From the IMG/VR virus record IMGVR_UViG_3300049048_000052, positions 124,001 through 188,000 of that record: a stretch of 64,000 nt of DNA; one strand, 5' to 3'. Each line of letters opens with the position of its first letter. The first letter of the stretch is position 1. This document shows positions 5,954 through 48,870 of the stretch, one piece after another. The position numbers and the translations under genes were made by a program. Below the pieces are notes generated by a model, which did no database searches, was not told the origin of the DNA, and saw nothing but the letters and a program-made list of their open reading frames with translations.

Positions 5954-6499
5954 TTAACTCATTGGAGTTAGTTGGTGTATTAGTTTATAAGCGTTCTTAA
6001 CTAGATCTCTAGAGAGCATCTTACCACCAGATATCAATTTTATAATTGGGTTCTTGCGTGAGTGGTCTAACTGAAATCTAGCTTGAGGATATAAGTCCAG
6101 GAAGGATGTGGCAGTATCTTTATTAGAGGCAGCTATTTCTATCCTATAAGTCTTAACTTTATAGACTTGTACTAAAAGTTGCTTTATCAGATCTATTAAA
6201 GTAGGATCCTGGTTGCAGAAGTAAACATGATTTGTTTTATCTGTATGCCAGCCCTCACATAAATAGGCCGTATGGGCAGCAATGGAAAGAGGTGTTAGGA
6301 GTAAATCATCTGTAGGGGAGATATAGTTCTTCCTAGCTAGAAAGTTATACTCTGAGGCAGATCTCATTGGTATATGGTACTTCCTTAAGTAAGACCTAAT
6401 AGTCTTATGGTTACAGGCTAGTAACTGACCTATCTGATAGGGATTAAGTTCCTGAGTCAGGTATAGATCCTCAAGTACCTCTTTATTAATTAACTTCAT
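5954..6499 (-). CDS. intron-encoded HTH + LAGLIDADG-like endonuclease, antisense to the intron
   Basis: N-terminal HTH (LEDLYL...QIGQLLACNHKTIRSYLRKYHI); AYLCEGW...VYFCNQDPTLI LAGLIDADG-like block. Confidence 0.7.
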   Translation of the reverse strand: MKLINKEVLEDLYLTQELNPYQIGQLLACNHKTIRSYLRKYHIPMRSASEYNFLARKNYISPTDDLLLTPLSIAAHTAYLCEGWHTDKTNHVYFCNQDPTLIDLIKQLLVQVYKVKTYRIEIAASNKDTATSFLDLYPQARFQLDHSRKNPIIKLISGGKMLSRDLVKNAYKLIHQLTPMS

Positions 6500-6753
6500 A
6501 ATCCTGAGCCTTCATGTAGAAATACATGTTGTGAACGAAGCTATATGCGGGAAACGCTTAAAGCCTACAACACTATATGTCTACCAAGATATAAGTAACA
6601 GTTTGTAGGATGTAACAATAGCCAATCCGCAGGGAAGATACCTAGGTATCCCCTCAGAGACTAAACGCTTTGCACCTTAACGTAGAGACGAAGGTGATGA
6701 TATAGTCCAGACTACAACAGCTTACGCTGGCCTATGAAAGTAGGAGTAGTAAG
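5956..6753 (+). mobile_element. group I intron in tRNA-Leu anticodon (after U34)
   Basis: Exon ends in U, intron ends in G; core elements ATATGCGGGAAA (P), AATCCGCAGG (Q), TCAGAGACTAAA (R), GATGATATAGTCC (S); IGS-like GAGCCT at 6506-6511. Confidence 0.9.
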
Positions 6754-8308: not shown

Positions 8309-8310
8309 TT

Positions 8311-8535
8311 GTCAGTTTACCTGTCCTGACGTTGTGAAAAGATAGGTGTAGGTCATAGGCCTAACTAGCAAGAATTGAGTTCGAATCTCAACAGGTCCAT
8401 TTCGAGGGCCTGACTTGGTAATCGATTGTTAGCATGAGGAACTATGACTGAAGGTGTGTACAACCAAAGTACAGAACAACAAGTGCAACCAATAACATTG
8501 TACCCTTCTCAAGGGTAAGTTCTATAGTAGTGTAA
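8311..8535 (+). ncRNA. ssrA: tmRNA, circularly permuted (two-piece): acceptor piece about 8311-8399, coding piece from 8406; tag ORF 8485-8535 ATNNIVPFSRVSSIVV*
   Basis: T arm TTGAG-TTCGAAT-CTCAA and CAGGTCC-A lie upstream of the 5' strand GGGCCTG (G3:U70); P2 helices GTCATAG/CTATGAC and CTAGCAA/TTGTTAG; pseudoknots at 8311-8347 and about 8453-8473; cyanobacterial-type NNIVPF tag. Confidence 0.9.
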
Positions 8536-8540
8536 TCTAC

Positions 8541-9305
8541 TCAGGCGTTTAGTATACTAAACGCCTGCTCTTTTTTACGCATACAGTAGGGACCACCTAA
8601 GTTATATAACCTAAATATAAAAGTCTTAAGGATTTTACCTTGAAAGGAGAAACCGTACTGATTATTCCAGTTGGGATTCTTACTTTGCAAGTCCCTCATA
8701 TGTACATTAAGGGATATATCTAGTAGTTTGTTGAGCCTAGAGGCTAGAGTATACATAAAAGACTTTGAGCATCCATAGGCTGTAAGTCTACGGGAGGACC
8801 AACACCCGTCAGAGTCTAGATATCCTCTAATGAAATCTAACTCGTAGACGCTGTCTATAAGAGGCTCAGGGTAAATCATAGTCTTGGACTTATTACTTTC
8901 TAACTTTAGGATAGTAGTTAGATCTCTATGTAGACTAGTGGAACATATAGCGAGCTGAAGACAGTTAGAAGCTATATTCCTTATTTTATAATCGGTATTG
9001 AGGTTAGATTGTATCTGTTCTAGAATATCCCTGTCCGAGGTAGTAAATACTATCTGACATCCATTTCTATGTAAGTGACCATCCCCATACAATACACCTA
9101 ACATCCAAGCTTTAAAGGTGTCCATAGGGAACAATTTATAGTTCTTAAGCTTAGATAATGGCTTATAGGACATTGCCCCGGAGCTCTGCAGGACTTTGTA
9201 TATACAATAAGAGGATAGCCCTAATTTAGAACTAATATTTGTAACAGACTGACCCTCCTTATACATAGTTATAATAGGCGTTGGGTTAATATGAGTAGAT
9301 TTCAT
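8541..9305 (-). CDS. double-motif LAGLIDADG homing endonuclease with N-terminal HTH
   Basis: AWMLGVLYGDGHL and DFIRGYLDSDGCW motifs. Confidence 0.9.
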   Translation of the reverse strand: MKSTHINPTPIITMYKEGQSVTNISSKLGLSSYCIYKVLQSSGAMSYKPLSKLKNYKLFPMDTFKAWMLGVLYGDGHLHRNGCQIVFTTSDRDILEQIQSNLNTDYKIRNIASNCLQLAICSTSLHRDLTTILKLESNKSKTMIYPEPLIDSVYELDFIRGYLDSDGCWSSRRLTAYGCSKSFMYTLASRLNKLLDISLNVHMRDLQSKNPNWNNQYGFSFQGKILKTFIFRLYNLGGPYCMRKKEQAFSILNA

Positions 9306-17758: not shown

Positions 17759-18463
17759 ATGAATCTAATATTAGTTGGGGCTGGGCAATTGGGCTCAGCC
17801 TTTATCTTGGAATTGCTTAAACGGATATCGGCTACAGGTTTCACTGCTATCACTATACATATCTATGATGATGATATCGTAGAGGATAGGAATACCCATG
17901 TACAGTATTTCACCCCCAGGGATCGAGAGAAGCCCAAGGCTGTGGTTATGGCTGACCTGGCTGCAGAGTATGGTATAAAGGCCATCGCCCATGTTGAGCG
18001 CTTTGCCTTCCCAGATCTACAAGCTATGGAGAACGTGGTAGTGGTTGATGCTGTAGACAATGTCAGCACCAGGTATGCTCTGTGGAACTATGCGGTAACA
18101 CAGAATGTACCCCTGATGACTATGGGTAATAGCCTGAAGGGTAATGGCTTTGTCACATGGACCTGTGCTGCCTTTGATCACAACACCTGGGGCCTAGGTG
18201 CAGGTAGCTACACTGCAATCATGAATGCAATCGAGAAAGAAAAGGAACCTGAAGAGAAGGTACCCCCTTGTGAACTAACTAAGTATAGAGGTCTAGCCCT
18301 TAATACTGCGTTGGCCGCATGTGAGGCATTCCTTATCTATTGGGGTCAGGATGTCATGATTAGAATAGACCCTGAGGTATATCAAGCTGGCTTCGTCACT
18401 GAGTGGCGTATCAAGCCCGAGGGTTATGAGTTGGTTCACATTAGTTATATGGAAGGTAAGTAG
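17759..18463 (+). CDS. ThiF/E1-like adenylating enzyme
   Basis: VGAGQLGS, YDDDIVEDRN..Q, KPKA, DAVDN..TR, MGN; PPC (Cys171) candidate thioester Cys; no CxxC Zn motifs. Confidence 0.9.
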   Translation: MNLILVGAGQLGSAFILELLKRISATGFTAITIHIYDDDIVEDRNTHVQYFTPRDREKPKAVVMADLAAEYGIKAIAHVERFAFPDLQAMENVVVVDAVDNVSTRYALWNYAVTQNVPLMTMGNSLKGNGFVTWTCAAFDHNTWGLGAGSYTAIMNAIEKEKEPEEKVPPCELTKYRGLALNTALAACEAFLIYWGQDVMIRIDPEVYQAGFVTEWRIKPEGYELVHISYMEGK

Positions 18464-19856: not shown

Positions 19857-21968
19857 ATGGATAGAAGATATTTTGAACTGATTAAACCTAAGTACTTGAC
19901 TTGGGAGTTTCTATCTAAGTATGTGGAGGTCAAGCCTCCTTTTGGGGCTATAGGACCCATCGTATATCTAAGGACATACTCTAGGTTTGTCCCTCAAATG
20001 AGCAGGAGGGAGTTGTGGTGGGAGACCTGTATGAGGGTAACTGAATATAGTATGTCCCTATTCCCAGCTAAGCCTAGGTACCCTATGTCCTTCGAGGAGT
20101 TACAGGCAGAGGCAGAGGAACTCTTTGATAACCTATTCTGGATGAAGGTCTTTGCTGCAGGGCGTACTATGTTCACTGGAGGGGCCCAACTGAAGACTGG
20201 GGACTCTCAATTCAATTGTAGCTTTATTGCTGTTAGTGAGTTGAAGGCATTCAAGGATGCCCTGTATCTCCTGATGAATGGTTGTGGTGTTGGTTTCTCA
20301 GTTGAGAGGCAGTACACGGAGAATCTACCCAGGTTCAGACAGGACTTTAAGGTTAGACATCTGGATTATAATCCGATAGCTAGGGGAAAAAGAGAGGACA
20401 TCACTCGTCTTGAAGAGGATGATAACAACCACATAATCAAGATAGGAGATAGTAAGGAAGGCTGGTGCGATGCACTGTTTGGTTTCCTGTCTAACTTAGC
20501 AGATCTGAGCTGTTGGAAGAACTTTGTATTTATATACAACGATGTCAGACCTGAGGGTGAGAAGCTTAAGACCTTTGGTGGTAGAGCCAGTGGGCCTGCA
20601 CCCCTAAGACTAATGTTCGAGCGTATTGAACAGACCATCAAGGAAGCGCCTAAGGGTCATCTGAGACCTGTAGACGTAATGGATATCATGAATATCATTG
20701 CGGCCGCAGTAGTTGTAGGTGGTGTCCGTAGGTCCTCTGAGATTGCCTTTGGTAACCTAGATGATGTGGACTTCGTAGAGGCTAAGCTGAACCTATGGTC
20801 TGATCCAGATAAGCAAAGGTACCAGGCTACTAGAGTTCTCTCCAATAACTCTGTGGCTATATGGGAGAAACCTAGTAAGGCCCAGCTAGTAGATATATTT
20901 GAACGTATTAAGAATAATGGTGAGCCTGGCATCTCTATTGCAGGTAATGCCGCTAAGAGAAGACCTAACTATAAGGGCTCTAATCCATGTCATGAGATCC
21001 TATTGGATCATAATGGAGTATGTAATTTAACTACTATAAATATGGCTGCCTTTGTGGAGGCTGATCGTATCTTTAACTGGAAGGCCTTTGAGAGAGCGCT
21101 TTATCATGCAGTCCGTATGGGTTCCCGTATTACCAATGTTAATATGTGGGATCCTGATTGGGATTATGTTCAGAAGAGAGACCGCCTACTAGGTGTATCC
21201 CTAACTGGTCAAATGGACTGCTGGAATAAGATGGGGGTAGACTTTGATAGTACTACTGCCATCAATATACTCTCTAGTGCTAAGGCTTATGCTAGGGCAT
21301 ACGCAGATGAATACCATAATATCATGGGTATTCCTACATCCCTTCTGATTACTACTGTTAAACCAGAGGGCACGATCTCTCAGTTACCTACAGTAAGCAG
21401 TGGGGTCCATGCTAGTTATGCTCCTTATTACATTAGGAGAGTAAGGATTAGTAGTAATGATCCTGTGGCTAAAGCACTAAGGGACATGGGTCTAGAACCT
21501 CAGCCTGAGAATGGACAAGGTAAAGACCTGGATGCTCCTGACTGTTCCACCTGGGTATTCAGCTTCCCCATTAAGACTGATGCTAAGATCAGGGCCATTG
21601 ATGAGCCTGCGATCCGTCAGCTTAAGAGGTACAAGGTTATGATGGATGAGTATGTTGATCATACTTGTTCTATTACCGTTACTGTGGCCCCGGATGAATG
21701 GGATGAGGTAGTAGATTGGGTCTACGACAATTGGGAGTCCTGTGTAGGTATTGCATTCTTACCTAGGTTTGATCCTAGTGAGCCGGGTAACATGTACCCT
21801 CAGATGCCATATGAGACATGTACTGAAGAACAGTACCATGAGATGGTTAAGGCCATGGGTACCATCGATGAGGATGAGCTTGTAGCTTTGATCTCAGTCT
21901 TTGAGCAGGAGTACGAGGAGCATGAGCTTGATGCAGGCTGTGCTACTGGTATGTGTCCCGTTAGATAA
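19857..21968 (+). CDS. nrdJ: class II (B12-dependent) ribonucleoside-triphosphate reductase
   Basis: YLRTYSR, FNCSF, GCGVGF, NPCHEI, CNL, TTVKPEGTISQL, C-terminal CATGMCPVR. Confidence 0.95.
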   Translation: MDRRYFELIKPKYLTWEFLSKYVEVKPPFGAIGPIVYLRTYSRFVPQMSRRELWWETCMRVTEYSMSLFPAKPRYPMSFEELQAEAEELFDNLFWMKVFAAGRTMFTGGAQLKTGDSQFNCSFIAVSELKAFKDALYLLMNGCGVGFSVERQYTENLPRFRQDFKVRHLDYNPIARGKREDITRLEEDDNNHIIKIGDSKEGWCDALFGFLSNLADLSCWKNFVFIYNDVRPEGEKLKTFGGRASGPAPLRLMFERIEQTIKEAPKGHLRPVDVMDIMNIIAAAVVVGGVRRSSEIAFGNLDDVDFVEAKLNLWSDPDKQRYQATRVLSNNSVAIWEKPSKAQLVDIFERIKNNGEPGISIAGNAAKRRPNYKGSNPCHEILLDHNGVCNLTTINMAAFVEADRIFNWKAFERALYHAVRMGSRITNVNMWDPDWDYVQKRDRLLGVSLTGQMDCWNKMGVDFDSTTAINILSSAKAYARAYADEYHNIMGIPTSLLITTVKPEGTISQLPTVSSGVHASYAPYYIRRVRISSNDPVAKALRDMGLEPQPENGQGKDLDAPDCSTWVFSFPIKTDAKIRAIDEPAIRQLKRYKVMMDEYVDHTCSITVTVAPDEWDEVVDWVYDNWESCVGIAFLPRFDPSEPGNMYPQMPYETCTEEQYHEMVKAMGTIDEDELVALISVFEQEYEEHELDAGCATGMCPVR

Positions 21969-38024: not shown

Positions 38025-38747
38025 ATGACTAAGAGAAGACTGGCCTTGAAGGAGAAAGAAGTTGTGAATAACGCCCCTATCTCCTTTCCTATAAAGACAG
38101 ACACACTAATCAAGCCTGCTAATTATAATCAGAGGGAGTTAGTCAGAAGCATAAAGCAGAATGATATAACCCTAGCCTATGGTCCTGCAGGTACGGGGAA
38201 GACATTGGTCTCCCTATTTACCGCAGTACAGATGCTAAATAACTCTGATAGTCCTATAGAAAAGATCATTTATATAAGAGCTAATGTGGATTCTAGGGAG
38301 GAGAAAGAACTAGGCGCATTACCTGGTGGTTTCATAGATAAGGTTAAGCCCCTTGCCTATCCAATCCTAGATAACCTTATCCACTTCATGCCTAACAATC
38401 AGGCTACCTACTTAATAGAGAGTGGTAGGATTGAGATTAGTCCCCTAATGATGATCAGAGGCAGATCCTTAGCCAATACTTTTATTCTTGCTGATGAGGT
38501 GCAAAACATTAGCCCTAAAGCTATGAAGACATTACTTACTCGTATATCCTATGGGAGCCGTATGGTCCTAGTGGGAGACCCTGAGCAGGTGGATGTAACT
38601 CATAGAGGAAGGGATGGACTCTCTGATGCGGTCAGTAGACTAGGATCTATTAGGGAGGGCGTGGGTATGATTAGGTTTACAAAGGCTGATATTGTACGTC
38701 ATGGTCTAACAGGAGAAATACTCGATGCCTACGAGGGAGTGTACTAA
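38025..38747 (+). CDS. phoH: PhoH-family protein
   Basis: GPAGTGKT, LGALPG, RGRSL, ILADEVQN, LLTRI, GDPEQVD, DIVRH. Confidence 0.95.
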   Translation: MTKRRLALKEKEVVNNAPISFPIKTDTLIKPANYNQRELVRSIKQNDITLAYGPAGTGKTLVSLFTAVQMLNNSDSPIEKIIYIRANVDSREEKELGALPGGFIDKVKPLAYPILDNLIHFMPNNQATYLIESGRIEISPLMMIRGRSLANTFILADEVQNISPKAMKTLLTRISYGSRMVLVGDPEQVDVTHRGRDGLSDAVSRLGSIREGVGMIRFTKADIVRHGLTGEILDAYEGVY

Positions 38748-39225
38748 TCCCCACTATAGCCATAAATATGGGGTATCTAAAGGCAGGTACCCCATAAAAC
38801 AGATTCGTGATCTGGTAAGACAATATGGTTCATCTTCGGATCCTACTAGGATAGATTTAGATGGAGATCTGGTCTGTGTTACTAGTGAGAGACTTAGAAC
38901 TTTCGCTTCTAAGGGGGTTCAATGTGTCCGTTGTGGTATTACAGGAGATCATTATATTAAAGAGAAGAGTCATATAAGCGATCTCTTCTTTCATCTCAAT
39001 CTGTATAGCACACATAGAAATGGTAACTTCATACTCATGACTAAGGATCATATAATCCCTAAGAGTGCAGGAGGTAGTAATAGCTTGTCTAACCTTCAAC
39101 CTATGTGTGCGCCTTGTAATAGAAAGAAAGGAGATAGCTATGGGCATGGCAGTGAGGGCAAAGACGAGAAAGAAGGTCATTCCTGCTCCGATGAGACTTC
39201 AGGTCTTCCTAAAGGAGTCCATTGA
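38725..39225 (+). CDS. HNH endonuclease
   Basis: CVRCG...MTKDHIIPKSAGGSN.LSNLQPMCAPCN..KG. Confidence 0.85.
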   Translation: MPTRECTNPHYSHKYGVSKGRYPIKQIRDLVRQYGSSSDPTRIDLDGDLVCVTSERLRTFASKGVQCVRCGITGDHYIKEKSHISDLFFHLNLYSTHRNGNFILMTKDHIIPKSAGGSNSLSNLQPMCAPCNRKKGDSYGHGSEGKDEKEGHSCSDETSGLPKGVH

Positions 39226-39670
39226 ATTACCTAAGTCTGTGGCCTCTGTGTCTATTAAGCAGGTAATGTACTGGAAGGGACAGGGTTTAGACTCTATTCT
39301 TCTTCATGGCTTAAATGTAAGACTTGATACTCAAACATTAACCACCTTCAGGAATTCAGGTGTTCACTGTATGATATGTGGTATAAAGGGGATCGTATTC
39401 AATCTCTATCACTTCCTTGATAACAGAGGACGTGAGACTGGGGATGGCTATCTTGTCCTTCATGCTCCTAATCCTAGATATGGGGGTTTCCCTAATCTTA
39501 AGATGGGCACAGATCATATAGTACCCAGATGTATGGGTGGTTCTGATCATATCGATAATCTGCAGACGTGTTGCTGTCAATGTAATGGTACTAAGGGAGG
39601 TGATCTGGATGGGGCTATTAAGGCCCTAATTAAGATGAGACTAGAGAGGAAGGAGCTCCTCAGAGGTTAG
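39140..39670 (+). CDS. HNH endonuclease (paralog)
   Basis: CMICG...DHIVPRCMGGSD.IDNLQTCCCQCN.TKG; GGAG SD before ATG 39140. Confidence 0.85.
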   Translation: MGMAVRAKTRKKVIPAPMRLQVFLKESIELPKSVASVSIKQVMYWKGQGLDSILLHGLNVRLDTQTLTTFRNSGVHCMICGIKGIVFNLYHFLDNRGRETGDGYLVLHAPNPRYGGFPNLKMGTDHIVPRCMGGSDHIDNLQTCCCQCNGTKGGDLDGAIKALIKMRLERKELLRG

Positions 39671-39716: not shown

Positions 39717-41257
39717 ATGAAATTAGAAGTACTAGATAAAGGTTTTATAGAGGTGGTCGATACCTTAGGTAGCGATCTAACCGTTGTTAATAGCGCTAGG
39801 GTATCCTTTGGACATCGTAAGGAGTCCCTTGATAAATCAGATATTAAGTTAATTGGATATTTAAAGAAGCACAAGCACTATTCTCCATTTCGCCATATGA
39901 TGGTGCAGCTGCATATCAAGATGCCTGAGGTGGTGGCAAGACAACTGTTAACAGAAATGGTGACCAGTAAATACAACTCCCTTGTATTAATCTAGTAATA
40001 GATTATGCAAAGGATAAATCAATGATTCTAGAGACTAAGGGCGATAAGGTACTACGTAGATGCGATACCTGTGGTAATGAGAAGTGGGTTGAGAAATGGA
40101 AGTACTATAAACTAGAGGAGCACACCTGTAGAGATTGTTACTGCCGATTAAAAGCAGCAGCACGTAAAGGTAAACCTTCTAGATACAAAGGTATTATTAG
40201 GCAACCCAATCCTAAGAGAGGGAGTACTTATATTAATTCCTCAGGTTACGTCGAGGAGTATATAGGTGCTGTAGATAATAATAGGAAAGGCAAGTATTAT
40301 CTCCAACACAGATTAATAGTTGAGAAGTACCTAGGTAGAGTCCTTGATAAATCAGAACTAGTTCACCATATTAATGGTGACAAAACTGATAATCGACTTG
40401 AGAACCTATACCTATGTCAATCTATGTCTCACCACAAGACTCTACACCAACAATTAGAGCAAGTATCTATGCAATTGGTTAAACTAAATCTTATAGAATT
40501 TGATAATGAAGCTGGTAGCTATAGAATAGCAGCCCATATCAGTAATGATATGGTGAATAATCCTGTGAATTCAGGGGAACCCCTAACGTATAATGACGAG
40601 GGCAATCCTGATCCAAGCTTTGAAGAGTAGTCTTCATTGAAGGAGCAACGACTATCCGTAAGGAGTAGGGCTCAAGGGAGCTCGAAGCGCAGGACATCCT
40701 AATAGGATGATGATATAGTCTGAGCTTTAGGGAGACCTAAAGAGAGTGTATGGAGCCGATATACTCGTAACATAACTGATAAACATGTCGTAGGTATTGA
40801 GACCTCCTCTTCCTCTGTATGTAAGGATCATGCATGGAATGAGATTAGTAGACGTTATGTAGAGATAGATGATTACTATGTGCCAGACATCTGGCGCCTG
40901 CAGTCTCCTTCTAATAAGCAAGCATCTCAGTTAGATGAACACGGTAATCCTATAGTTAACGAGGCTATACAAGAGTGGGCCTGTAAGGAATACGCAGACT
41001 TTATAGCTTCCCTAGATCTTAAGGTTAAAGCATTTATAGCTAAGGGTATTGCTAAAGAGCAGGCACAGATCATGCTGCCTATCTCTTTCTATACTGAGAT
41101 CTATTGGACCGCATCATTCCAGGCCATCATGAACTTCATTGAGCTTAGGAATGACAACCATGCCCAATGGGAGATTAGGCAGTATGCCCTTGCACTCCTC
41201 CGAATAATGGAGCAATTATTCCCAGTCTGCACTAATGCATGGTTAGAGAATAGCTGA
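39717..41257 (+). CDS. thyX: flavin-dependent thymidylate synthase, split by group I intron (exons 39717-39948, 40779-41257)
   Basis: NSARVS, HYSPF; spliced junction restores VARQLYKHVVG...WNEISRRY; HAQWEIR. Confidence 0.95.
39949..40778 (+). mobile_element. group I intron in thyX
   Basis: U|...G| boundaries; AATTCAGGGGAA (P), AATCCTGATCCAAG (Q), GCAACGACTA (R), GATGATATAGTCT (S); IGS GCAG at 40529-40532. Confidence 0.9.
40022..40630 (+). CDS. intron-encoded HNH homing endonuclease
   Basis: CxxC pairs; QHRLIVEKYLGR.L...E.VHHINGDKTDNRLENL. Confidence 0.9.
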   Translation: MILETKGDKVLRRCDTCGNEKWVEKWKYYKLEEHTCRDCYCRLKAAARKGKPSRYKGIIRQPNPKRGSTYINSSGYVEEYIGAVDNNRKGKYYLQHRLIVEKYLGRVLDKSELVHHINGDKTDNRLENLYLCQSMSHHKTLHQQLEQVSMQLVKLNLIEFDNEAGSYRIAAHISNDMVNNPVNSGEPLTYNDEGNPDPSFEE

Positions 41258-41290: not shown

Positions 41291-41785
41291 ATGGAAGATT
41301 CAATAGAAAGCTGTTTACAGGATACTGATGTTATAGCTGTTTATAGGCAGTACATAGAGGTATCAGATCCAGAGAAGTGGACCATAATGCCTCTTAAGGA
41401 ATGGGTAGAGAATGTAGATAAGGGAGACCGTAGAGGTTACTCACTAAAAGAGTCTGTACTATCCTGCATCAGAACTGCTATATGGCATAGGACTACTTCC
41501 TGGGAGGACCAAATGAAGCTAGCCAAGCCTATGGATACTGAGAAGATGCGCTCAATGGGAATGAATACCCAGAAAGCATATCAGTTCTTCAATGAAGATC
41601 CTATAGAGGCTTCTATAGACGATTGCACCCTAGAGGATAGTCTCAAGGCTAGGAAGCTAGAGATCTATATCAAGGAATTAGATATTGATAAGTTAAGAGA
41701 GTTCATATTGGGCTTCTATAAGCAGACGCTTATGAAGGAGGCCCTATATAAAAAGATGTTAAAGGTAAATATAAGTGGAAGCTAA
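41291..41785 (+). CDS. nblA: protein with C-terminal NblA (phycobilisome degradation)-like domain
   Basis: TLE.....R...........D....F....YKQ....EA.Y...LK aligns ungapped to the NblA pattern. Confidence 0.65.
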   Translation: MEDSIESCLQDTDVIAVYRQYIEVSDPEKWTIMPLKEWVENVDKGDRRGYSLKESVLSCIRTAIWHRTTSWEDQMKLAKPMDTEKMRSMGMNTQKAYQFFNEDPIEASIDDCTLEDSLKARKLEIYIKELDIDKLREFILGFYKQTLMKEALYKKMLKVNISGS

Positions 41786-42953: not shown

Positions 42954-43484
42954 ATGTGGGATATGTACGGGGATGATTATGGCAACATGGAGGGCTGTCC
43001 CCCTGACTTTGCTAGTAACTGTGCCCTTGGTGTAATTGGCTGTCCTAAGTGTTCTGCTAATGGTAAGGGGGATAGACTACTTTATCAACCCATAAGCCCT
43101 GATCTACCCTTAAAGTCCCATCCTACCTATGCTAAACCGGTCAAGGAGACTAAGGTTAAGGATGCTAAAGCTAGGGCCTATAATAGAAAGGGTAGATCCA
43201 TTGAGAAGAAGATCATGAAAGAGTTAGGAGCTAAGTCAACATATATGAGCGGCGCCACTAATCATGATGGTGATGGCCATATAACTATCAAGGGCTTCAA
43301 GTATAGAATAGGTCATAAGAATAGATTTAATAATAGAAATACGTTGGGCCCTACCTCATCCGAGATGAAACAGGATAAGGCAATGGGTATTACTATATGG
43401 GTAACATCTAGTGAGAAGGATGGCTCTATAGTAACTATGAGTAAAGAGTTATTCGAAGAGTTATTGGGTTATATAAATGAGTAA
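42954..43484 (+). CDS. putative PD-(D/E)XK Holliday-junction resolvase-like nuclease
   Basis: Cys cluster; KGRSIEK...SGA...GDG...HK; adjacent to recA. Confidence 0.55.
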   Translation: MWDMYGDDYGNMEGCPPDFASNCALGVIGCPKCSANGKGDRLLYQPISPDLPLKSHPTYAKPVKETKVKDAKARAYNRKGRSIEKKIMKELGAKSTYMSGATNHDGDGHITIKGFKYRIGHKNRFNNRNTLGPTSSEMKQDKAMGITIWVTSSEKDGSIVTMSKELFEELLGYINE

Positions 43485-45585: not shown

Positions 45586-48500
45586 ATGAAACTGATAAAA
45601 GGTTCTGAGATCGACTTCTATTACGTAACCTCTGATGTAGGACCTCTAGTAGAAGCGATCCAGGATCTAGACCTTGTCTTGCTTGATACCGAGACTTATC
45701 CATTAAGTGAGAAGTTCGGTCATACGGCTAATGGTCTAGATCCTCATACATCTAAGATAAGACTTATACAAATTGGTTGGCAGGGTTGCAATATACCTTA
45801 TGTAGTCGATGTTAAAAAGGTAAAGAATATCCAGCCTCTATTAGATCAACTAATGAGGGAGGACCTAAAGAAACTTATACATAATGCTCAGTTCGACCTG
45901 AGACATATATATTCTAACTTTGGTATATGGCTACCTAACGTGTATTGCAGTATGACTGCCATGAAGACCCTATCGGTCTCCACTGGTTGGCAAGTAGGTA
46001 GAATGAGAGGTCATTCACTCAGAAGTCTAGCAAGAGACTTCTGTGATAGACATCTGGATAAGACTGAACAGACTAGTGATTGGTCTAAGGATACACTGGA
46101 TGCTGAGCAGTTAGAGTATGCCGCTATGGATGTAGCACCTTTCATAGTTGATGCTTTCCTATCTATCAAAGAGGCCTTATGTGGACCCATACCATTAGGT
46201 TATGATGAGCCTAAACCTTTTGAGATAGATCAGGGGGCTGTTGTACCCATTGCTAAGATTGAGTATAGGGGCAATTATGTCAGCAGGGAAACATTGGAGA
46301 TCCTACTGAAGGAGTCTACTAGGTTAGCTGAGTCTCATAAACAGAAGCTATGCCAAGTACTAGACTTCCCTATTGAGAGGGAGATAGTAATGGGTGATGA
46401 TGGTCAACTACAGGTTAATACTGTGGTACCTGATAAAGTAGCTAAGTTACTCAATAATAATAAGGGTCTCGTATCACATATAAATAAACTCTTAGAGGGT
46501 TCTGGATTAACTTTAACAAATCTACAGAAAGAAGAGTTAGAGAACCGTTTAGAATTACTGTCTGAGAGTAAAGCATCAGAAGCTGATGAAGAATCTGAGT
46601 CTTCTGATGAGGATATAGATTATGACTATGATTATGGTATCAGTAGTATTAAAGAACTACTACTGTACAAGAAGTATGTAAAGTTGGTCTCAGATGTCAG
46701 TAAGCATATAGATGCTATTAATGTAGTAACAGGTAATATACATACTGACTTCCATATTATCAATGCGGCTACAGGTCGTATGGCATCCTCTTCTAATATG
46801 AATGGGATACGGGTAAACCTACAGCAGGTTAACAAATTTAGTACTAGGGCCCAGGTGCCTATTAGGTTACTAGGGGGAGAGCTGGATGAGCTAGCTGATG
46901 TTAACTTATCTCTTAGAGGCGCCTTCCAAAGTCCTGAAGGACATAGCATGGCAATATGCTTAGCTGGAGATACTCTCGTTTATACGACTAAAGGTTTAGT
47001 TGAGATAAAGGATATCCAGGCTGGGGATCAGGTCATCACTGATGGAGGTACAGCATCTGTATATCATACGAAGAAGACTGAGGGACGCCGTGTCTGGAAG
47101 CTTAAGACTAAACTGGGCTATGAGATAGAGACGACTCCAGGTCACAGATTTATGACTGTGAATGAGGAGGGTGACCTAGACTTCAAGGAGTTAAGACATC
47201 TTAAACCTAATGATTTTATAGTACTGCACAGGAATGAACATAGCTCCTATGAGGTAGACGGTGAACTCATAACTGAGTATGAGGCTACCCAGATAGGTCT
47301 CAACATGAAAGGTAGGAATAATGATAAGCAGGTACCCCCTGTTATTATGAGTGCCTCATCTAAGATTCAAGCTGCTTTCTTAAGGGGCCTCTATACAAAT
47401 GAGGGCTTCCTAGAAATGAACAGTAAGATCAGATATGTTGCCTTATCTACGGGTTCCGAAGTTTACTGTAAGCAGATACAGACCATGCTACTGAGTCTGG
47501 GTATTATATCTAGAAGGACTAGTAGAAGATATGAATGTGAGTATGGATATTATAGTGACTATTGGCTGACAATAGCTGAGATCGATCAGGTCAACCTATT
47601 TCGTAATCTCATAGGCTTCCTTGACGAAGCTAAGACAGAAGCATTAGATAGAAACTGTGATAAGCCTAAGGTATTCAATCGTAGCCATAACATACCCTTC
47701 TCTTTTGTTAAGAAGAGGATAGGTAAATCAGGTAAGCCTGGTATGGCGGACCTTAAACGTAATGGTAATAGATTTGGCACTACTACAAGGTATGCGGTTA
47801 ACAGAGCATACAGACAGGTACCTCATCTATTTGATCCCTCTATGCAACCTATTATAGATGGAACCCTTGCCTTTGATAGGGTGGTATCAATAGTAGATGA
47901 GGGTAAAGTCTGTGATGTTTATGATATTACTGTACCTCGTCTGAGAAGATTCAGTGCTAACGGCATAATAGTTCACAACTGTGACTATAGTAGTCAGGAG
48001 CTAATGATTGCGGCGGCCCTGTCTAATGATAGGGTAATGCTTGATGCTTTCTTTACGCAAAGGGATAATCCAACTCTTATCGATCCTGAAGGTAATGAAT
48101 ACGCTAACCCTTTGGTGGATCTACATACAGTAGCAGCCATGTCCCTATTCCCTCATCTCAATGAGGTGCCCTTGTGGAAGCTTGAGAAGGCTGCCAAGGA
48201 GATAGGTCCTGGAGGTCAGAAGTATCGAGATCTTGCCAAAGTGTTCAATTTTTCCATAATTTATGGTGCTTCTGCCCAGTCCTTAGCTCCTGGTCTTAAG
48301 TGTTCAGTTGAGGAGGCTGAGAGGTTCCTTGCGGCTTACTTTGGTAAGTTTAGAGGCTTAAAGGCATGGCTTGATAGGTCAGCTAAGTTAGCTAAGAAAC
48401 AGAAGTGGGTTACTAGTGCGACTGGCCGTAAGCTCTTCTGCTTTGAGTCTAACAATAAGGGCAGTGATAATGCAGTGGAACGTAAGGGTCCTAATGCATT

Positions 48501-48870
48501 AGTCCAAGGTCTTGCATCTGACATGATGAAGATGGCATTTAGCAGGGCCGTACCTAGGATAGAAAGACTTAATGATAAGAGAAGGTCATTAGATCCAGGA
48601 TGTAAGATAGGTTGGATACAGGCTATCGTACATGATGAGATTGTGGCTATCGTTCCAGGTACTCCTAAGTTAATTGATATAGTTAAAGCTGGTAATAAAG
48701 ACGGTACAGATAAGCTTATATATGAATTCCCAGAGATAGCTATGGAGTATGCTGAGTTAATCAGTGGCACCATGGAGGAGGTTGAGAGTGAATTACTATC
48801 ACCTCTAATTGGTCAGGACTTCCCCGCTAAGGCAGACCCAGGTCTAGGCTTTAGTTGGGCTGATAAGTAA
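45586..48870 (+). CDS. polA: family A DNA polymerase (3'-5' exo + pol) containing an intein
   Basis: DTET, HNAQFD, YAAMD exo motifs; TGRMAS, DYSSQEL, R..AK.FNFSIIYG, VHDE. Confidence 0.95.
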   Translation: MKLIKGSEIDFYYVTSDVGPLVEAIQDLDLVLLDTETYPLSEKFGHTANGLDPHTSKIRLIQIGWQGCNIPYVVDVKKVKNIQPLLDQLMREDLKKLIHNAQFDLRHIYSNFGIWLPNVYCSMTAMKTLSVSTGWQVGRMRGHSLRSLARDFCDRHLDKTEQTSDWSKDTLDAEQLEYAAMDVAPFIVDAFLSIKEALCGPIPLGYDEPKPFEIDQGAVVPIAKIEYRGNYVSRETLEILLKESTRLAESHKQKLCQVLDFPIEREIVMGDDGQLQVNTVVPDKVAKLLNNNKGLVSHINKLLEGSGLTLTNLQKEELENRLELLSESKASEADEESESSDEDIDYDYDYGISSIKELLLYKKYVKLVSDVSKHIDAINVVTGNIHTDFHIINAATGRMASSSNMNGIRVNLQQVNKFSTRAQVPIRLLGGELDELADVNLSLRGAFQSPEGHSMAICLAGDTLVYTTKGLVEIKDIQAGDQVITDGGTASVYHTKKTEGRRVWKLKTKLGYEIETTPGHRFMTVNEEGDLDFKELRHLKPNDFIVLHRNEHSSYEVDGELITEYEATQIGLNMKGRNNDKQVPPVIMSASSKIQAAFLRGLYTNEGFLEMNSKIRYVALSTGSEVYCKQIQTMLLSLGIISRRTSRRYECEYGYYSDYWLTIAEIDQVNLFRNLIGFLDEAKTEALDRNCDKPKVFNRSHNIPFSFVKKRIGKSGKPGMADLKRNGNRFGTTTRYAVNRAYRQVPHLFDPSMQPIIDGTLAFDRVVSIVDEGKVCDVYDITVPRLRRFSANGIIVHNCDYSSQELMIAAALSNDRVMLDAFFTQRDNPTLIDPEGNEYANPLVDLHTVAAMSLFPHLNEVPLWKLEKAAKEIGPGGQKYRDLAKVFNFSIIYGASAQSLAPGLKCSVEEAERFLAAYFGKFRGLKAWLDRSAKLAKKQKWVTSATGRKLFCFESNNKGSDNAVERKGPNALVQGLASDMMKMAFSRAVPRIERLNDKRRSLDPGCKIGWIQAIVHDEIVAIVPGTPKLIDIVKAGNKDGTDKLIYEFPEIAMEYAELISGTMEEVESELLSPLIGQDFPAKADPGLGFSWADK
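46957..47979 (+). mobile_element. intein (341 aa) with LAGLIDADG-type domain
   Basis: N-terminal CLAGDTLV, TPGHRF block B, FLRGLYTNEG, VYDITV...F.ANGIIVHN/C. Confidence 0.95.

What the first reader, a model, noticed from the sequence alone, without database searches (positions are those of the whole stretch)
41291..41785. NblA-like phycobilisome-degradation domain fused to a ~110-aa N-terminal extension
Residues encoded at about 41627-41764 (TLEDSLKARKLEIYIKELDIDKLREFILGFYKQTLMKEALYKKMLK) align without gaps to Nostoc NblA as I recall it (SLEQQFSIRSFATQVQNMSHDQAKDFLVKLYEQMVVREATYQELLK), matching LE, R, D, F, Y.Q, EA.Y and LK. NblA is normally about 60 aa and adapts phycobiliproteins to Clp proteases; phage nblA genes are known. 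The long extension is unusual and might retarget the adaptor. With the altered tmRNA tag and the Ubl operon, this suggests broad manipulation of host proteolysis.
Basis: partly seen in the sequence, partly recalled or inferred. Interest (0 to 1): 0.7.

Follow-up and report, generated by a model that had tools for sequence, protein, structure and literature searches.

The report
Two-domain NblA adaptor in a cyanophage
A 252-kb uncultured cyanophage encodes a real NblA (the small adaptor that sends the cyanobacterial light-harvesting antenna to a protease) fused to a conserved, previously undescribed 90-residue helical domain, and in another phage-like element that domain is a separate gene two genes downstream of nblA (one small ORF between), so the two parts probably work together.

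Summary
Window 41291-41785 (+) is a 164-aa ORF. Residues 113-158 match Pfam NblA (24.4 bits for the whole protein, 27.1 bits for the last 60 residues, cut-off 25) and align without gaps to the solved Anabaena NblA 1OJH.

The N-terminal extension is not an annotation artefact. Six other metagenomic proteins of 163-193 aa have the same two-part build. A profile of their C-terminal parts hits all four solved NblA sequences (best E 3e-22).

Where long contigs exist, the gene sits in the same collinear block (phoH - thymidylate synthase - fusion - ... - recA - polA). It is therefore a vertically inherited gene of an uncultured phage clade, distantly related to Ma-LMM01-type Microcystis phages.

The N-domain models confidently as a helical bundle and has no convincing sequence or fold relative. 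It also occurs alone:
- in a PaV-LD-like element, two genes downstream of a 62-aa nblA;
- in two other phage contigs;
- in 1 of 401 cyanobacterial genomes searched.

Best reading: a tethered two-module version of the NblA proteolysis adaptor. What the N-domain binds is unknown. The link to tmRNA and Ubl genes is untested. I rate it a new variant of a known kind, of moderate interest.

The parts
41291..41785 (+). Whole gene: 164-aa two-domain protein (stop codon included)
   Evidence: ORF list and translation. Coding score is positive in this frame only. Full-length relatives P0002-P0007 have E 2.8e-20 to 1.6e-5.
41291..41560 (+). N-domain, residues 1-90: conserved all-helical domain of unknown function. 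Invariant positions are D11, Y21, G45, L52, A78, with a G-E..G-[YF]-S-L-K motif.
   Evidence: Alignments A1 and A2. In the AlphaFold2 model built with the alignment, the 10-residue block means of pLDDT are 90-97 for residues 11-70; predicted helices are 5-9, 12-24, 35-44, 52-68, 71-88. The domain occurs alone in P0008, P0009, P0010 and in L022. No Pfam, PHROG or PDB sequence match.
41561..41626 (+). Linker, residues 91-112: poorly conserved, variable-length, low-confidence tether
   Evidence: pLDDT is under 50 for residues 96-99 and 101-108. Linker length differs by up to about 30 residues among relatives, and there is no conserved Met.
41627..41764 (+). NblA domain, residues 113-158: helix-loop-helix
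   Evidence: Pfam PF04485 positions 3-48 of 50. Ungapped alignment to 1OJH. Model helices 114-129 and 132-162. VIA-align: 1OJH Z 5.9, rmsd 2.4 A over 52 of 52 residues; 2Q8V Z 5.3; 3CS5 Z 4.8, rmsd 1.5 A over 48 of 48 residues. The family profile hits four solved NblA sequences.

Best explanation
The gene encodes a phage version of the NblA proteolysis adaptor built from two modules joined by a flexible linker. Shown here: the C-terminal 50 residues are a true NblA homologue with the NblA helix-loop-helix. The N-terminal 90 residues are a separate, conserved, folded helical domain. The fusion is a conserved gene of an uncultured clade of large phages related to Ma-LMM01-type cyanophages. The two modules also occur as separate genes close together on one strand in another phage-like element. 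Inferred from what is known of NblA: during infection the NblA module dimerises, binds phycobiliproteins through its C-terminal motif (here Y-K-K-M-L-K), and engages the host ClpC-ClpP protease through the motif at the start of the hairpin. The nitrogen-rich phycobilisome is then dismantled to feed phage production, as shown for short phage NblAs. Inferred with less confidence: the tethered N-domain is an accessory docking module that gives the adaptor a second contact, either on the phycobilisome or on the host protease machinery. This would resemble the way SspB and MecA separate cargo binding and protease binding into two tethered parts. The phage has no ClpP of its own, so it must use the host's.
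For: NblA identity: (7 of 9 family members hit Pfam NblA, best E 3.7e-18). The NblA part of relative P0004 is 56% identical to the 65-aa host NblA of a Microcoleus MAG.

Fusion is real and conserved.

Collinear synteny in L003, L004, L012 and L013, partly also in L005: phoH, thyX or thyA, fusion, 129-aa, 76-aa, 141-aa (minus strand), 176-aa, recA, polA.

Functional link of the two modules: in L009, L010 and L011 a 62-aa nblA, a 57-aa ORF and the 110-aa stand-alone N-domain lie in a row on one strand. That element's integrase is closest to that of Planktothrix phage PaV-LD.

Cyanobacterial host: PolA, PhoH and the 176-aa ORF are closest to Microcoleus and Microcystis phages. There is a sub-threshold cyanobacterial-type permuted tmRNA. 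The N-domain is found in a cyanobacterial chromosome.

No phage ClpP.

Known biology of NblA and of phage NblA: PMC7966870, PMC4103541, PMC12695635.
Against: No experiment or expression data exist; no RNA run holding the stretch was found.

The window's own NblA score is only at Pfam's threshold. Two aromatic positions of the N-terminal motif that are F in typical NblAs are L here, and the K-x-x-W-G-L tail is absent, so activity may be altered.

In the fusion the NblA hairpin no longer has a free N-terminus. That is the end reported to bind ClpC (PMC4103541).

The N-domain also occurs without any nearby nblA: in L006 and L007, and in G076, where nblA lies 423 kb away. Its job therefore need not involve NblA.

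Its fold matches are weak and ambiguous.

The host is inferred, not shown; the source sample is labelled a soil metagenome.
Confidence: 0.65

Rival explanations
1. Retargeting ('degrader') adaptor. The N-domain binds a host protein that is not part of the phycobilisome, and the NblA module serves mainly as the ClpC handle. The fusion then sends a new substrate to the host Clp protease. Stand-alone N-domains would merely bind or block that target.
For: The N-domain exists on its own in phage contigs and in one cyanobacterial chromosome with no nblA nearby, so it has a partner of its own. The flexible linker suits a bridging protein. The fusion evolves faster (26-32% identity) than its neighbours (36-65%), as host-interaction proteins often do.
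Against: The C-terminal phycobiliprotein-binding end of NblA (Y..LK) is kept in all seven fusions, which argues that phycobilisome binding is retained. No target is known. Fold searches give no lead above background.
Confidence: 0.15
2. Exapted NblA hairpin. The C-terminal helix-loop-helix now serves only as a dimerisation element for the N-domain, and the protein works in DNA or nucleotide metabolism rather than in antenna degradation.
For: The gene always sits in the nucleotide-metabolism and replication block, between thymidylate synthase and recA. The window's copy scores only at Pfam's threshold and has lost some typical residues.
Against: Other members of the same orthologous group have strongly canonical NblA domains (best Pfam E 3.7e-18; 56% identity to a host NblA). 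An open frame beginning next to Ma-LMM01's short nblA shows ribonucleotide-reductase-like sequence on my reading, not scanned against any family library. Its nblA and nrdA are studied together in PMC4103541. So this neighbourhood says little. NblA is confined to phycobilisome-bearing organisms and their viruses (control genomes: only Synechococcus rings).
Confidence: 0.1
3. Mis-annotated start. The real product is a short NblA of about 75 residues starting at M86, M89 or M91, and the upstream 85 codons are untranslated or a remnant.
For: Three in-frame ATGs lie close together at residues 86-91, one with a GAGAAG 9 nt upstream.
Against: The upstream part is conserved as protein in nine relatives at 22-35% identity and also occurs as a stand-alone protein. 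It has a coding-type codon score and folds confidently. The relatives have no Met in the linker. An extra short isoform in this one phage is not excluded.
Confidence: 0.04

Closest known systems
Cyanobacterial NblA (Pfam PF04485; solved structures 1OJH, 2Q8V, 2QDO, 3CS5)
   Same: Homologous helix-loop-helix of about 50 residues. Ungapped alignment to 1OJH. The C-terminal Y..(L/M)LK end is kept. The family profile hits all four solved NblA sequences.
   Different: Canonical NblA is a stand-alone protein of about 60 aa (PMC7966870). Here the hairpin is the C-terminal third of a 164-aa protein behind a folded 90-residue domain and a linker, so its ClpC-binding N-terminal end is not free. Two typical F positions are L, and the W-G-L tail is missing in the window's copy.
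Short phage NblAs: Ma-LMM01 gp005, PaV-LD ORF022L, marine T7-like cyanophage NblA
   Same: A phage-borne NblA homologue in a phage whose nearest cultured relatives (PolA, PhoH, 176-aa ORF) are the Ma-LMM01 group. The expected role in infection is the one shown for S-TIP37 NblA (PMC12695635).
   Different: Those are 54-79 aa. Ma-LMM01 NblA has only a 12-residue extra helix (PMC11477984). None carries the N-domain, and the N-domain profile finds nothing in the Ma-LMM01, PaV-LD or Microcoleus phage My-WqHQDG records. Sequence identity to them is too low for tblastn.
Tethered two-module protease adaptors (SspB for ClpXP, MecA for ClpCP). This is an analogy only, from general knowledge.
   Same: A folded domain, a flexible linker and a protease-engaging element in one chain.
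   Different: There is no sequence or fold relationship. Which module binds what is unknown here.
D1 small (lid) domain of Clp/Hsp100 ATPases, and sigma-70 region 2. These are weak shape resemblances of the N-domain.
   Same: VIA-align places residues 1-73 (up to 90) on ClpB1 343-428 (Z 6.4), ClpC1 348-413 (Z 5.7), ClpB NBD1 (Z 5.6) and ClpA 348-414 (Z 5.5), and on ECF sigma factors (Z 4.5-5.4). ESM Atlas shape searches list sigma-70 region 2 clusters at TM under 0.5.
   Different: All Z scores are below the level at which the tool says helical bundles match by common arrangement. Foldseek finds nothing. There is no Pfam hit to AAA lid or sigma families even at E 10. hhalign against a phage sigma factor gives probability 0.4%.

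Membership tests
NblA (PF04485) | Sequence match to the family HMM at the curated threshold | tested here: met
   C-terminal 60 residues: 27.1 bits. Six-frame genome search: 26.3 bits (cut-off 25). Whole protein: 24.4 bits, just under. 7 of 9 aligned family members match, best E 3.7e-18. The profile of the fusion family's C-domains hits 1OJH at E 3.2e-22.
NblA (PF04485) | Helix-loop-helix fold of about 50 residues | tested here: met
   Predicted helices 114-129 and 132-162. They superpose on 1OJH (Z 5.9, rmsd 2.4 A, 52 of 52 residues), 2Q8V (Z 5.3) and 3CS5 (Z 4.8, rmsd 1.5 A, 48 of 48 residues). This is a prediction, not a solved structure, and hairpins also match unrelated coiled coils at similar Z.
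NblA (PF04485) | Small single-domain protein of about 55-65 aa | tested here: not met
   The protein is 164 aa with a second conserved domain. Host and cultured-phage NblAs seen here are 54-79 aa. The 150 listed matches from 401 cyanobacterial genomes lie in open frames of 56-142 aa.
NblA (PF04485) | Conserved C-terminal motif used for phycobiliprotein binding and N-terminal motif used for ClpC binding (Bienert 2006 and Karradt 2008, as summarised in PMC4103541) | tested here: inconclusive
   The C-terminal end is Y-K-K-M-L-K, against Y-Q-E-L-L-K in 1OJH: Y and K kept, L to M. The N-terminal motif is L-E-D-S-L..R-K-L against L-E-Q-Q-F..R-S-F: L, E and R kept, both F replaced by L. Which residues are essential was taken from the literature summary only.
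NblA (PF04485) | Homodimer forming a four-helix bundle | not tested
   The one complex job held two copies of the C-domain, but only the N-domain partner was scored and the job gave no verdict.
NblA (PF04485) | Causes phycobilisome loss (bleaching) and binds ClpC and phycobiliproteins | not testable with these tools
   Needs expression in a cyanobacterium and pull-downs.
NblA (PF04485) | Occurs in phycobilisome-bearing organisms or their viruses | tested here: met
   The nearest cultured relatives of three neighbouring genes are Microcystis and Microcoleus phages. There is a cyanobacterial-type tmRNA candidate. The host itself is not identified.

The most novel reading that the evidence does not exclude
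The N-domain is a new, cyanobacteria-specific protein-binding module. Fused to the ClpC-engaging NblA hairpin, it would make a natural 'targeted degrader' that lets the phage send a chosen host protein (not only antenna proteins) to the host Clp protease. Alternatively, it would clamp the adaptor onto the ClpC ring by imitating its D1 small domain. Either way, it would show that the NblA hairpin is a portable protease handle that phages recombine with different targeting domains.
Probability: 0.18. Interest if true: 0.8.

Novelty: new variant of a known kind. Interest (0 to 1): 0.55.

Why it matters
NblA is the only known specialised ClpC adaptor of cyanobacteria. A 2025 study showed that phage NblA measurably lowers oceanic photosynthesis (PMC12695635). 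How a 60-residue hairpin both grips the antenna and engages ClpC is still only partly understood.

A natural fusion, together with a split version in another element, pins a second conserved protein module to the NblA pathway. That gives a concrete new component to test by pull-down, deletion and structure. It also shows that phage NblAs are not all minimal copies of the host gene.

The practical consequence is modest: annotation pipelines miss this gene. None of the records in the large protein collections carries a name, and the window's protein has no precomputed Pfam domain there.

Tried and rejected
1. BLAST of the region and of the protein against 50,697 phage records found no match. The stand-alone N-domain P0009 also found none.

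2. The word-indexed protein search with the single sequence found only the protein itself. The relatives came from the exhaustive HMMER search.

3. The single-sequence AlphaFold model was poor (pLDDT 51) and was not used.

4. Foldseek against PDB, BFVD and AFDB clusters gave nothing at E 0.001 or better. The one lead was an unnamed 104-aa AFDB entry (E 0.02, TM by hit 0.62). It is probably the cyanobacterial stand-alone N-domain later found in L022, which is also 104 aa. That identity is not proven.

5. The VIA-align second look and two ESM Atlas shape searches gave only weak sigma-region-2-like shapes.

6. The N-domain profile against PDB sequences gave only chance-level hits. hhalign against a phage sigma factor gave none.

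7. Complex prediction with the N-domain against two copies of the NblA domain gave no verdict (score 0.01, mark 0.32). This is neither support nor evidence against binding.

9. The weak N-domain hit inside a 378-aa ORF of G354 (E 7e-5) was set aside as probably spurious. On my reading that ORF looks like a glycosyltransferase; it was not scanned against any family library.

10. No NblA-like ORF lies beside the stand-alone N-domains in L006, L007 or L022.

11. There is no psbA in the genome.

12. Literature searches for an NblA with an N-terminal extension or fusion found none. The papers checked describe only short NblAs, or a 12-residue extra helix.

Full report
**1. What is in the sequence**

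Window 41291-41785 (+) is an ATG-to-TAA ORF of 164 codons. It starts 34 bases after the stop codon of the second thyX exon and ends 86 bases before the next ORF.

- Pfam's NblA model (PF04485) is the only family matched, even at E 10. It scores 24.4 bits (E 4e-5) for the whole protein and 27.1 bits for the last 60 residues, against a cut-off of 25.
- A six-frame search of the whole 251,780-bp virus record finds this one NblA match at 26.3 bits.

**2. The extension is a real, conserved domain**

An exhaustive HMMER search of 1.84 billion representative proteins found eight relatives.

- Six of them (163-193 aa) align over the whole length.
- Two of them (109-110 aa) align only to the first 90-100 residues.
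- A further stand-alone relative of 123 aa came from the profile search.

In the alignment the N-terminal part has invariant positions D11, Y21, G45, L52 and A78 and a G-E..G-[YF]-S-L-K motif. A linker of very variable length follows, then the NblA part.

Seven of the nine aligned proteins hit Pfam NblA, the best at E 3.7e-18. A profile of the seven C-terminal parts hits all four solved NblA sequences: 1OJH at 3.2e-22, 2Q8V at 3e-9, 2QDO at 1e-8 and 3CS5 at 2.4e-7.

Codon usage of the N-terminal 88 codons is that of this genome's genes in this frame only. The window's internal Met codons at 86, 89 and 91 have no counterparts in the relatives. A short product from an internal start is therefore not the conserved form of the gene.

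**3. Structure**

With the nine-sequence alignment, AlphaFold2 gives mean pLDDT 79. The 10-residue block means are 90-97 for residues 11-70. Residues 96-108 are low-confidence, and the C-terminal part forms a hairpin of helices 114-129 and 132-162.

An all-against-PDB structural alignment puts the hairpin on NblA:
- 1OJH: Z 5.9, rmsd 2.4 A, all 52 residues;
- 2Q8V: Z 5.3;
- 3CS5: Z 4.8, rmsd 1.5 A, all 48 residues.

The N-domain has no convincing match.
- Its best rows are the D1 small domain of Clp/Hsp100 ATPases (ClpB1, ClpC1, ClpB, ClpA; Z 5.5-6.4) and ECF sigma factors.
- Atlas searches list sigma-70 region 2 shapes at TM below 0.5.
- These values lie in the range the tool describes as a common arrangement for helical bundles.
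- Foldseek, Pfam, the PDB profile search and hhalign against a sigma factor all give nothing.

The resemblance to the Clp D1 small domain is worth remembering, because NblA's partner is ClpC. It is not evidence.

**4. Genomic setting and lineage**

Around the gene lie phoH, two HNH ORFs, a thyX split by a group I intron that carries an HNH ORF, then the fusion, four small ORFs, recA and a family A DNA polymerase.

The contigs of the full-length relatives are collinear with this: phoH, thyX (thyA plus DHFR in one), fusion, then homologues of the 129-aa, 76-aa, 141-aa and 176-aa ORFs, recA and polA.

The fusion is thus an orthologous gene of one uncultured phage clade. It is more diverged (26-32% identity) than its neighbours (36-65%).

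Among 50,697 phage records, the closest relatives are:
- for PolA, Microcoleus phage My-WqHQDG and the Ma-LMM01/MaMV Microcystis phages;
- for PhoH, the Ma-LMM01/MaMV Microcystis phages;
- for the 176-aa ORF, only the Ma-LMM01/MaMV group.

A permuted tmRNA candidate scores just under threshold for Rfam's permuted and cyanobacterial tmRNA models. The source run is labelled a soil metagenome. A cyanobacterial host is a strong inference, perhaps a soil-crust filamentous form, but it is not shown.

**5. The two modules as separate genes**

The stand-alone N-domain P0009 (110 aa) lies, in one element recovered from four samples, 157 bases downstream of a 62-aa gene that hits Pfam NblA. A 57-aa ORF lies between them and all three are on one strand. 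That element's integrase is closest to that of Planktothrix phage PaV-LD, a cyanophage whose own short nblA lies near its integrase.

A fusion in one lineage and neighbouring genes in another is the classic sign of a shared function. It is, however, a single independent instance.

Other stand-alone N-domains have no nblA nearby.
- P0008 and P0010 sit after an SSB gene in phage contigs. The Gp3-like protein of one contig has its only phage match in a Microcystis phage. Its sigma factor matches Synechococcus phages at the highest coverage (85%), although Enterococcus and faecal-sample phage records rank as high or higher by E-value at 66-77% coverage.
- A 104-aa copy sits among toxin-antitoxin-like genes (named by eye) in 1 of 401 cyanobacterial genomes searched, 423 kb from that genome's nblA.
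- The N-domain profile finds nothing in Ma-LMM01, PaV-LD or the Microcoleus phage.

**6. How it most likely works**

Established knowledge:
- NblA is a roughly 60-residue helix-loop-helix that forms dimers, binds phycobiliproteins and ClpC, and triggers phycobilisome degradation (PMC7966870).
- It binds ClpC through a motif near its N-terminus and phycobiliproteins through one near its C-terminus (PMC4103541).
- Phage NblAs are active and benefit the phage (PMC12695635).

The window's NblA part keeps the C-terminal Y..LK end and the L-E and R of the N-terminal motif, but both F positions are L. The genome has no ClpP.

I therefore read the protein as a phage NblA-type adaptor that uses the host Clp protease, with the N-domain as a tethered accessory docking module. 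What the N-domain contacts is not known. The direct test I could run, a complex prediction of the N-domain with the NblA dimer, gave no verdict.

Rival readings:
- a retargeting adaptor for a non-antenna substrate;
- an exapted hairpin used only for dimerisation;
- a mis-called start, which the conservation data make unlikely.

**7. Comparison and novelty**

The C-terminal part passes the sequence and fold tests for NblA. The protein as a whole fails the 'small single-domain' trait. So it is an NblA-domain protein with a new architecture, not a typical NblA.

Host and cultured-phage NblAs seen here are 54-79 aa. The 150 listed NblA matches from 401 cyanobacterial genomes lie in frames of 56-142 aa. 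The only reported phage-specific addition is a 12-residue helix in Ma-LMM01 NblA (PMC11477984). Searches of the paper library found no description of an NblA fused to another domain. That library is incomplete, so this is absence of a report, not proof of novelty.

Verdict: new variant of a known kind; moderate interest.

Noticed in passing
window 39717-41257: thyX is split into two ORFs (39717-39995 and 40880-41257) by a group I intron. Rfam RF00028 scores 91.9 bits at 40510-40742. The intron carries an HNH_3 endonuclease ORF at 40022-40630. In relatives L012 and L013 thyX is a single ORF.
   Followed up: partly
window 6487-6728: A second group I intron match (RF00028, 66.8 bits). The gene it interrupts was not examined.
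   Followed up: no
window 38725-39670: Two overlapping HNH-endonuclease ORFs in different frames (38725-39225 and 39065-39670) lie between phoH and thyX. They may be two homing endonucleases or one frameshifted gene.
   Followed up: no
window 8310-8626: ARAGORN calls a permuted tmRNA with tag ATNNIVPFSRVSSIVV. Rfam sees it only below its gathering scores: tmRNA_permuted 45 bits against 47, and cyano_tmRNA 43.1 bits against 70. I used it here only as a hint of a cyanobacterial host.
   Followed up: partly
genome G000:C1:50858-50929 (outside the window): ARAGORN reports a tRNA with anticodon CTA, which would read TAG. There are 19 other tRNA calls, three of them with unassigned two-base anticodons. 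I did not examine whether TAG is recoded anywhere. The gene studied here ends in TAA.
   Followed up: no
window 17759-18463: A ThiF-family (E1-like) ORF (Pfam 51.9 bits) lies next to large ORFs with no Pfam match and upstream of a class II ribonucleotide reductase (19857-21968). No Prok-JAB and no ClpP were found in the genome.
   Followed up: partly
window 45586-48870; L013 12845-14873 and 15547-18381: The family A DNA polymerase ORF is 1094 aa and matches relatives in two pieces covering only 52-56% of it. In relative L013 both recA and polA are split into two ORFs with an inserted ORF between, and L012 has an intein-bearing protein. Insertions (inteins, introns, homing genes) seem rife in this clade.
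   Followed up: no
window 42954-43484: Among 50,697 phage records, this 176-aa ORF of unknown function has homologues only in the Ma-LMM01/MaMV group of Microcystis phages (36-38% identity). It is a useful marker tying this uncultured clade to that group.
   Followed up: partly
L010 883-1056 (also in L009 and L011): A 57-aa ORF that on my reading has a hydrophobic C-terminal stretch sits between the stand-alone nblA and the stand-alone N-domain in the PaV-LD-like element. It may be a third component.
   Followed up: no
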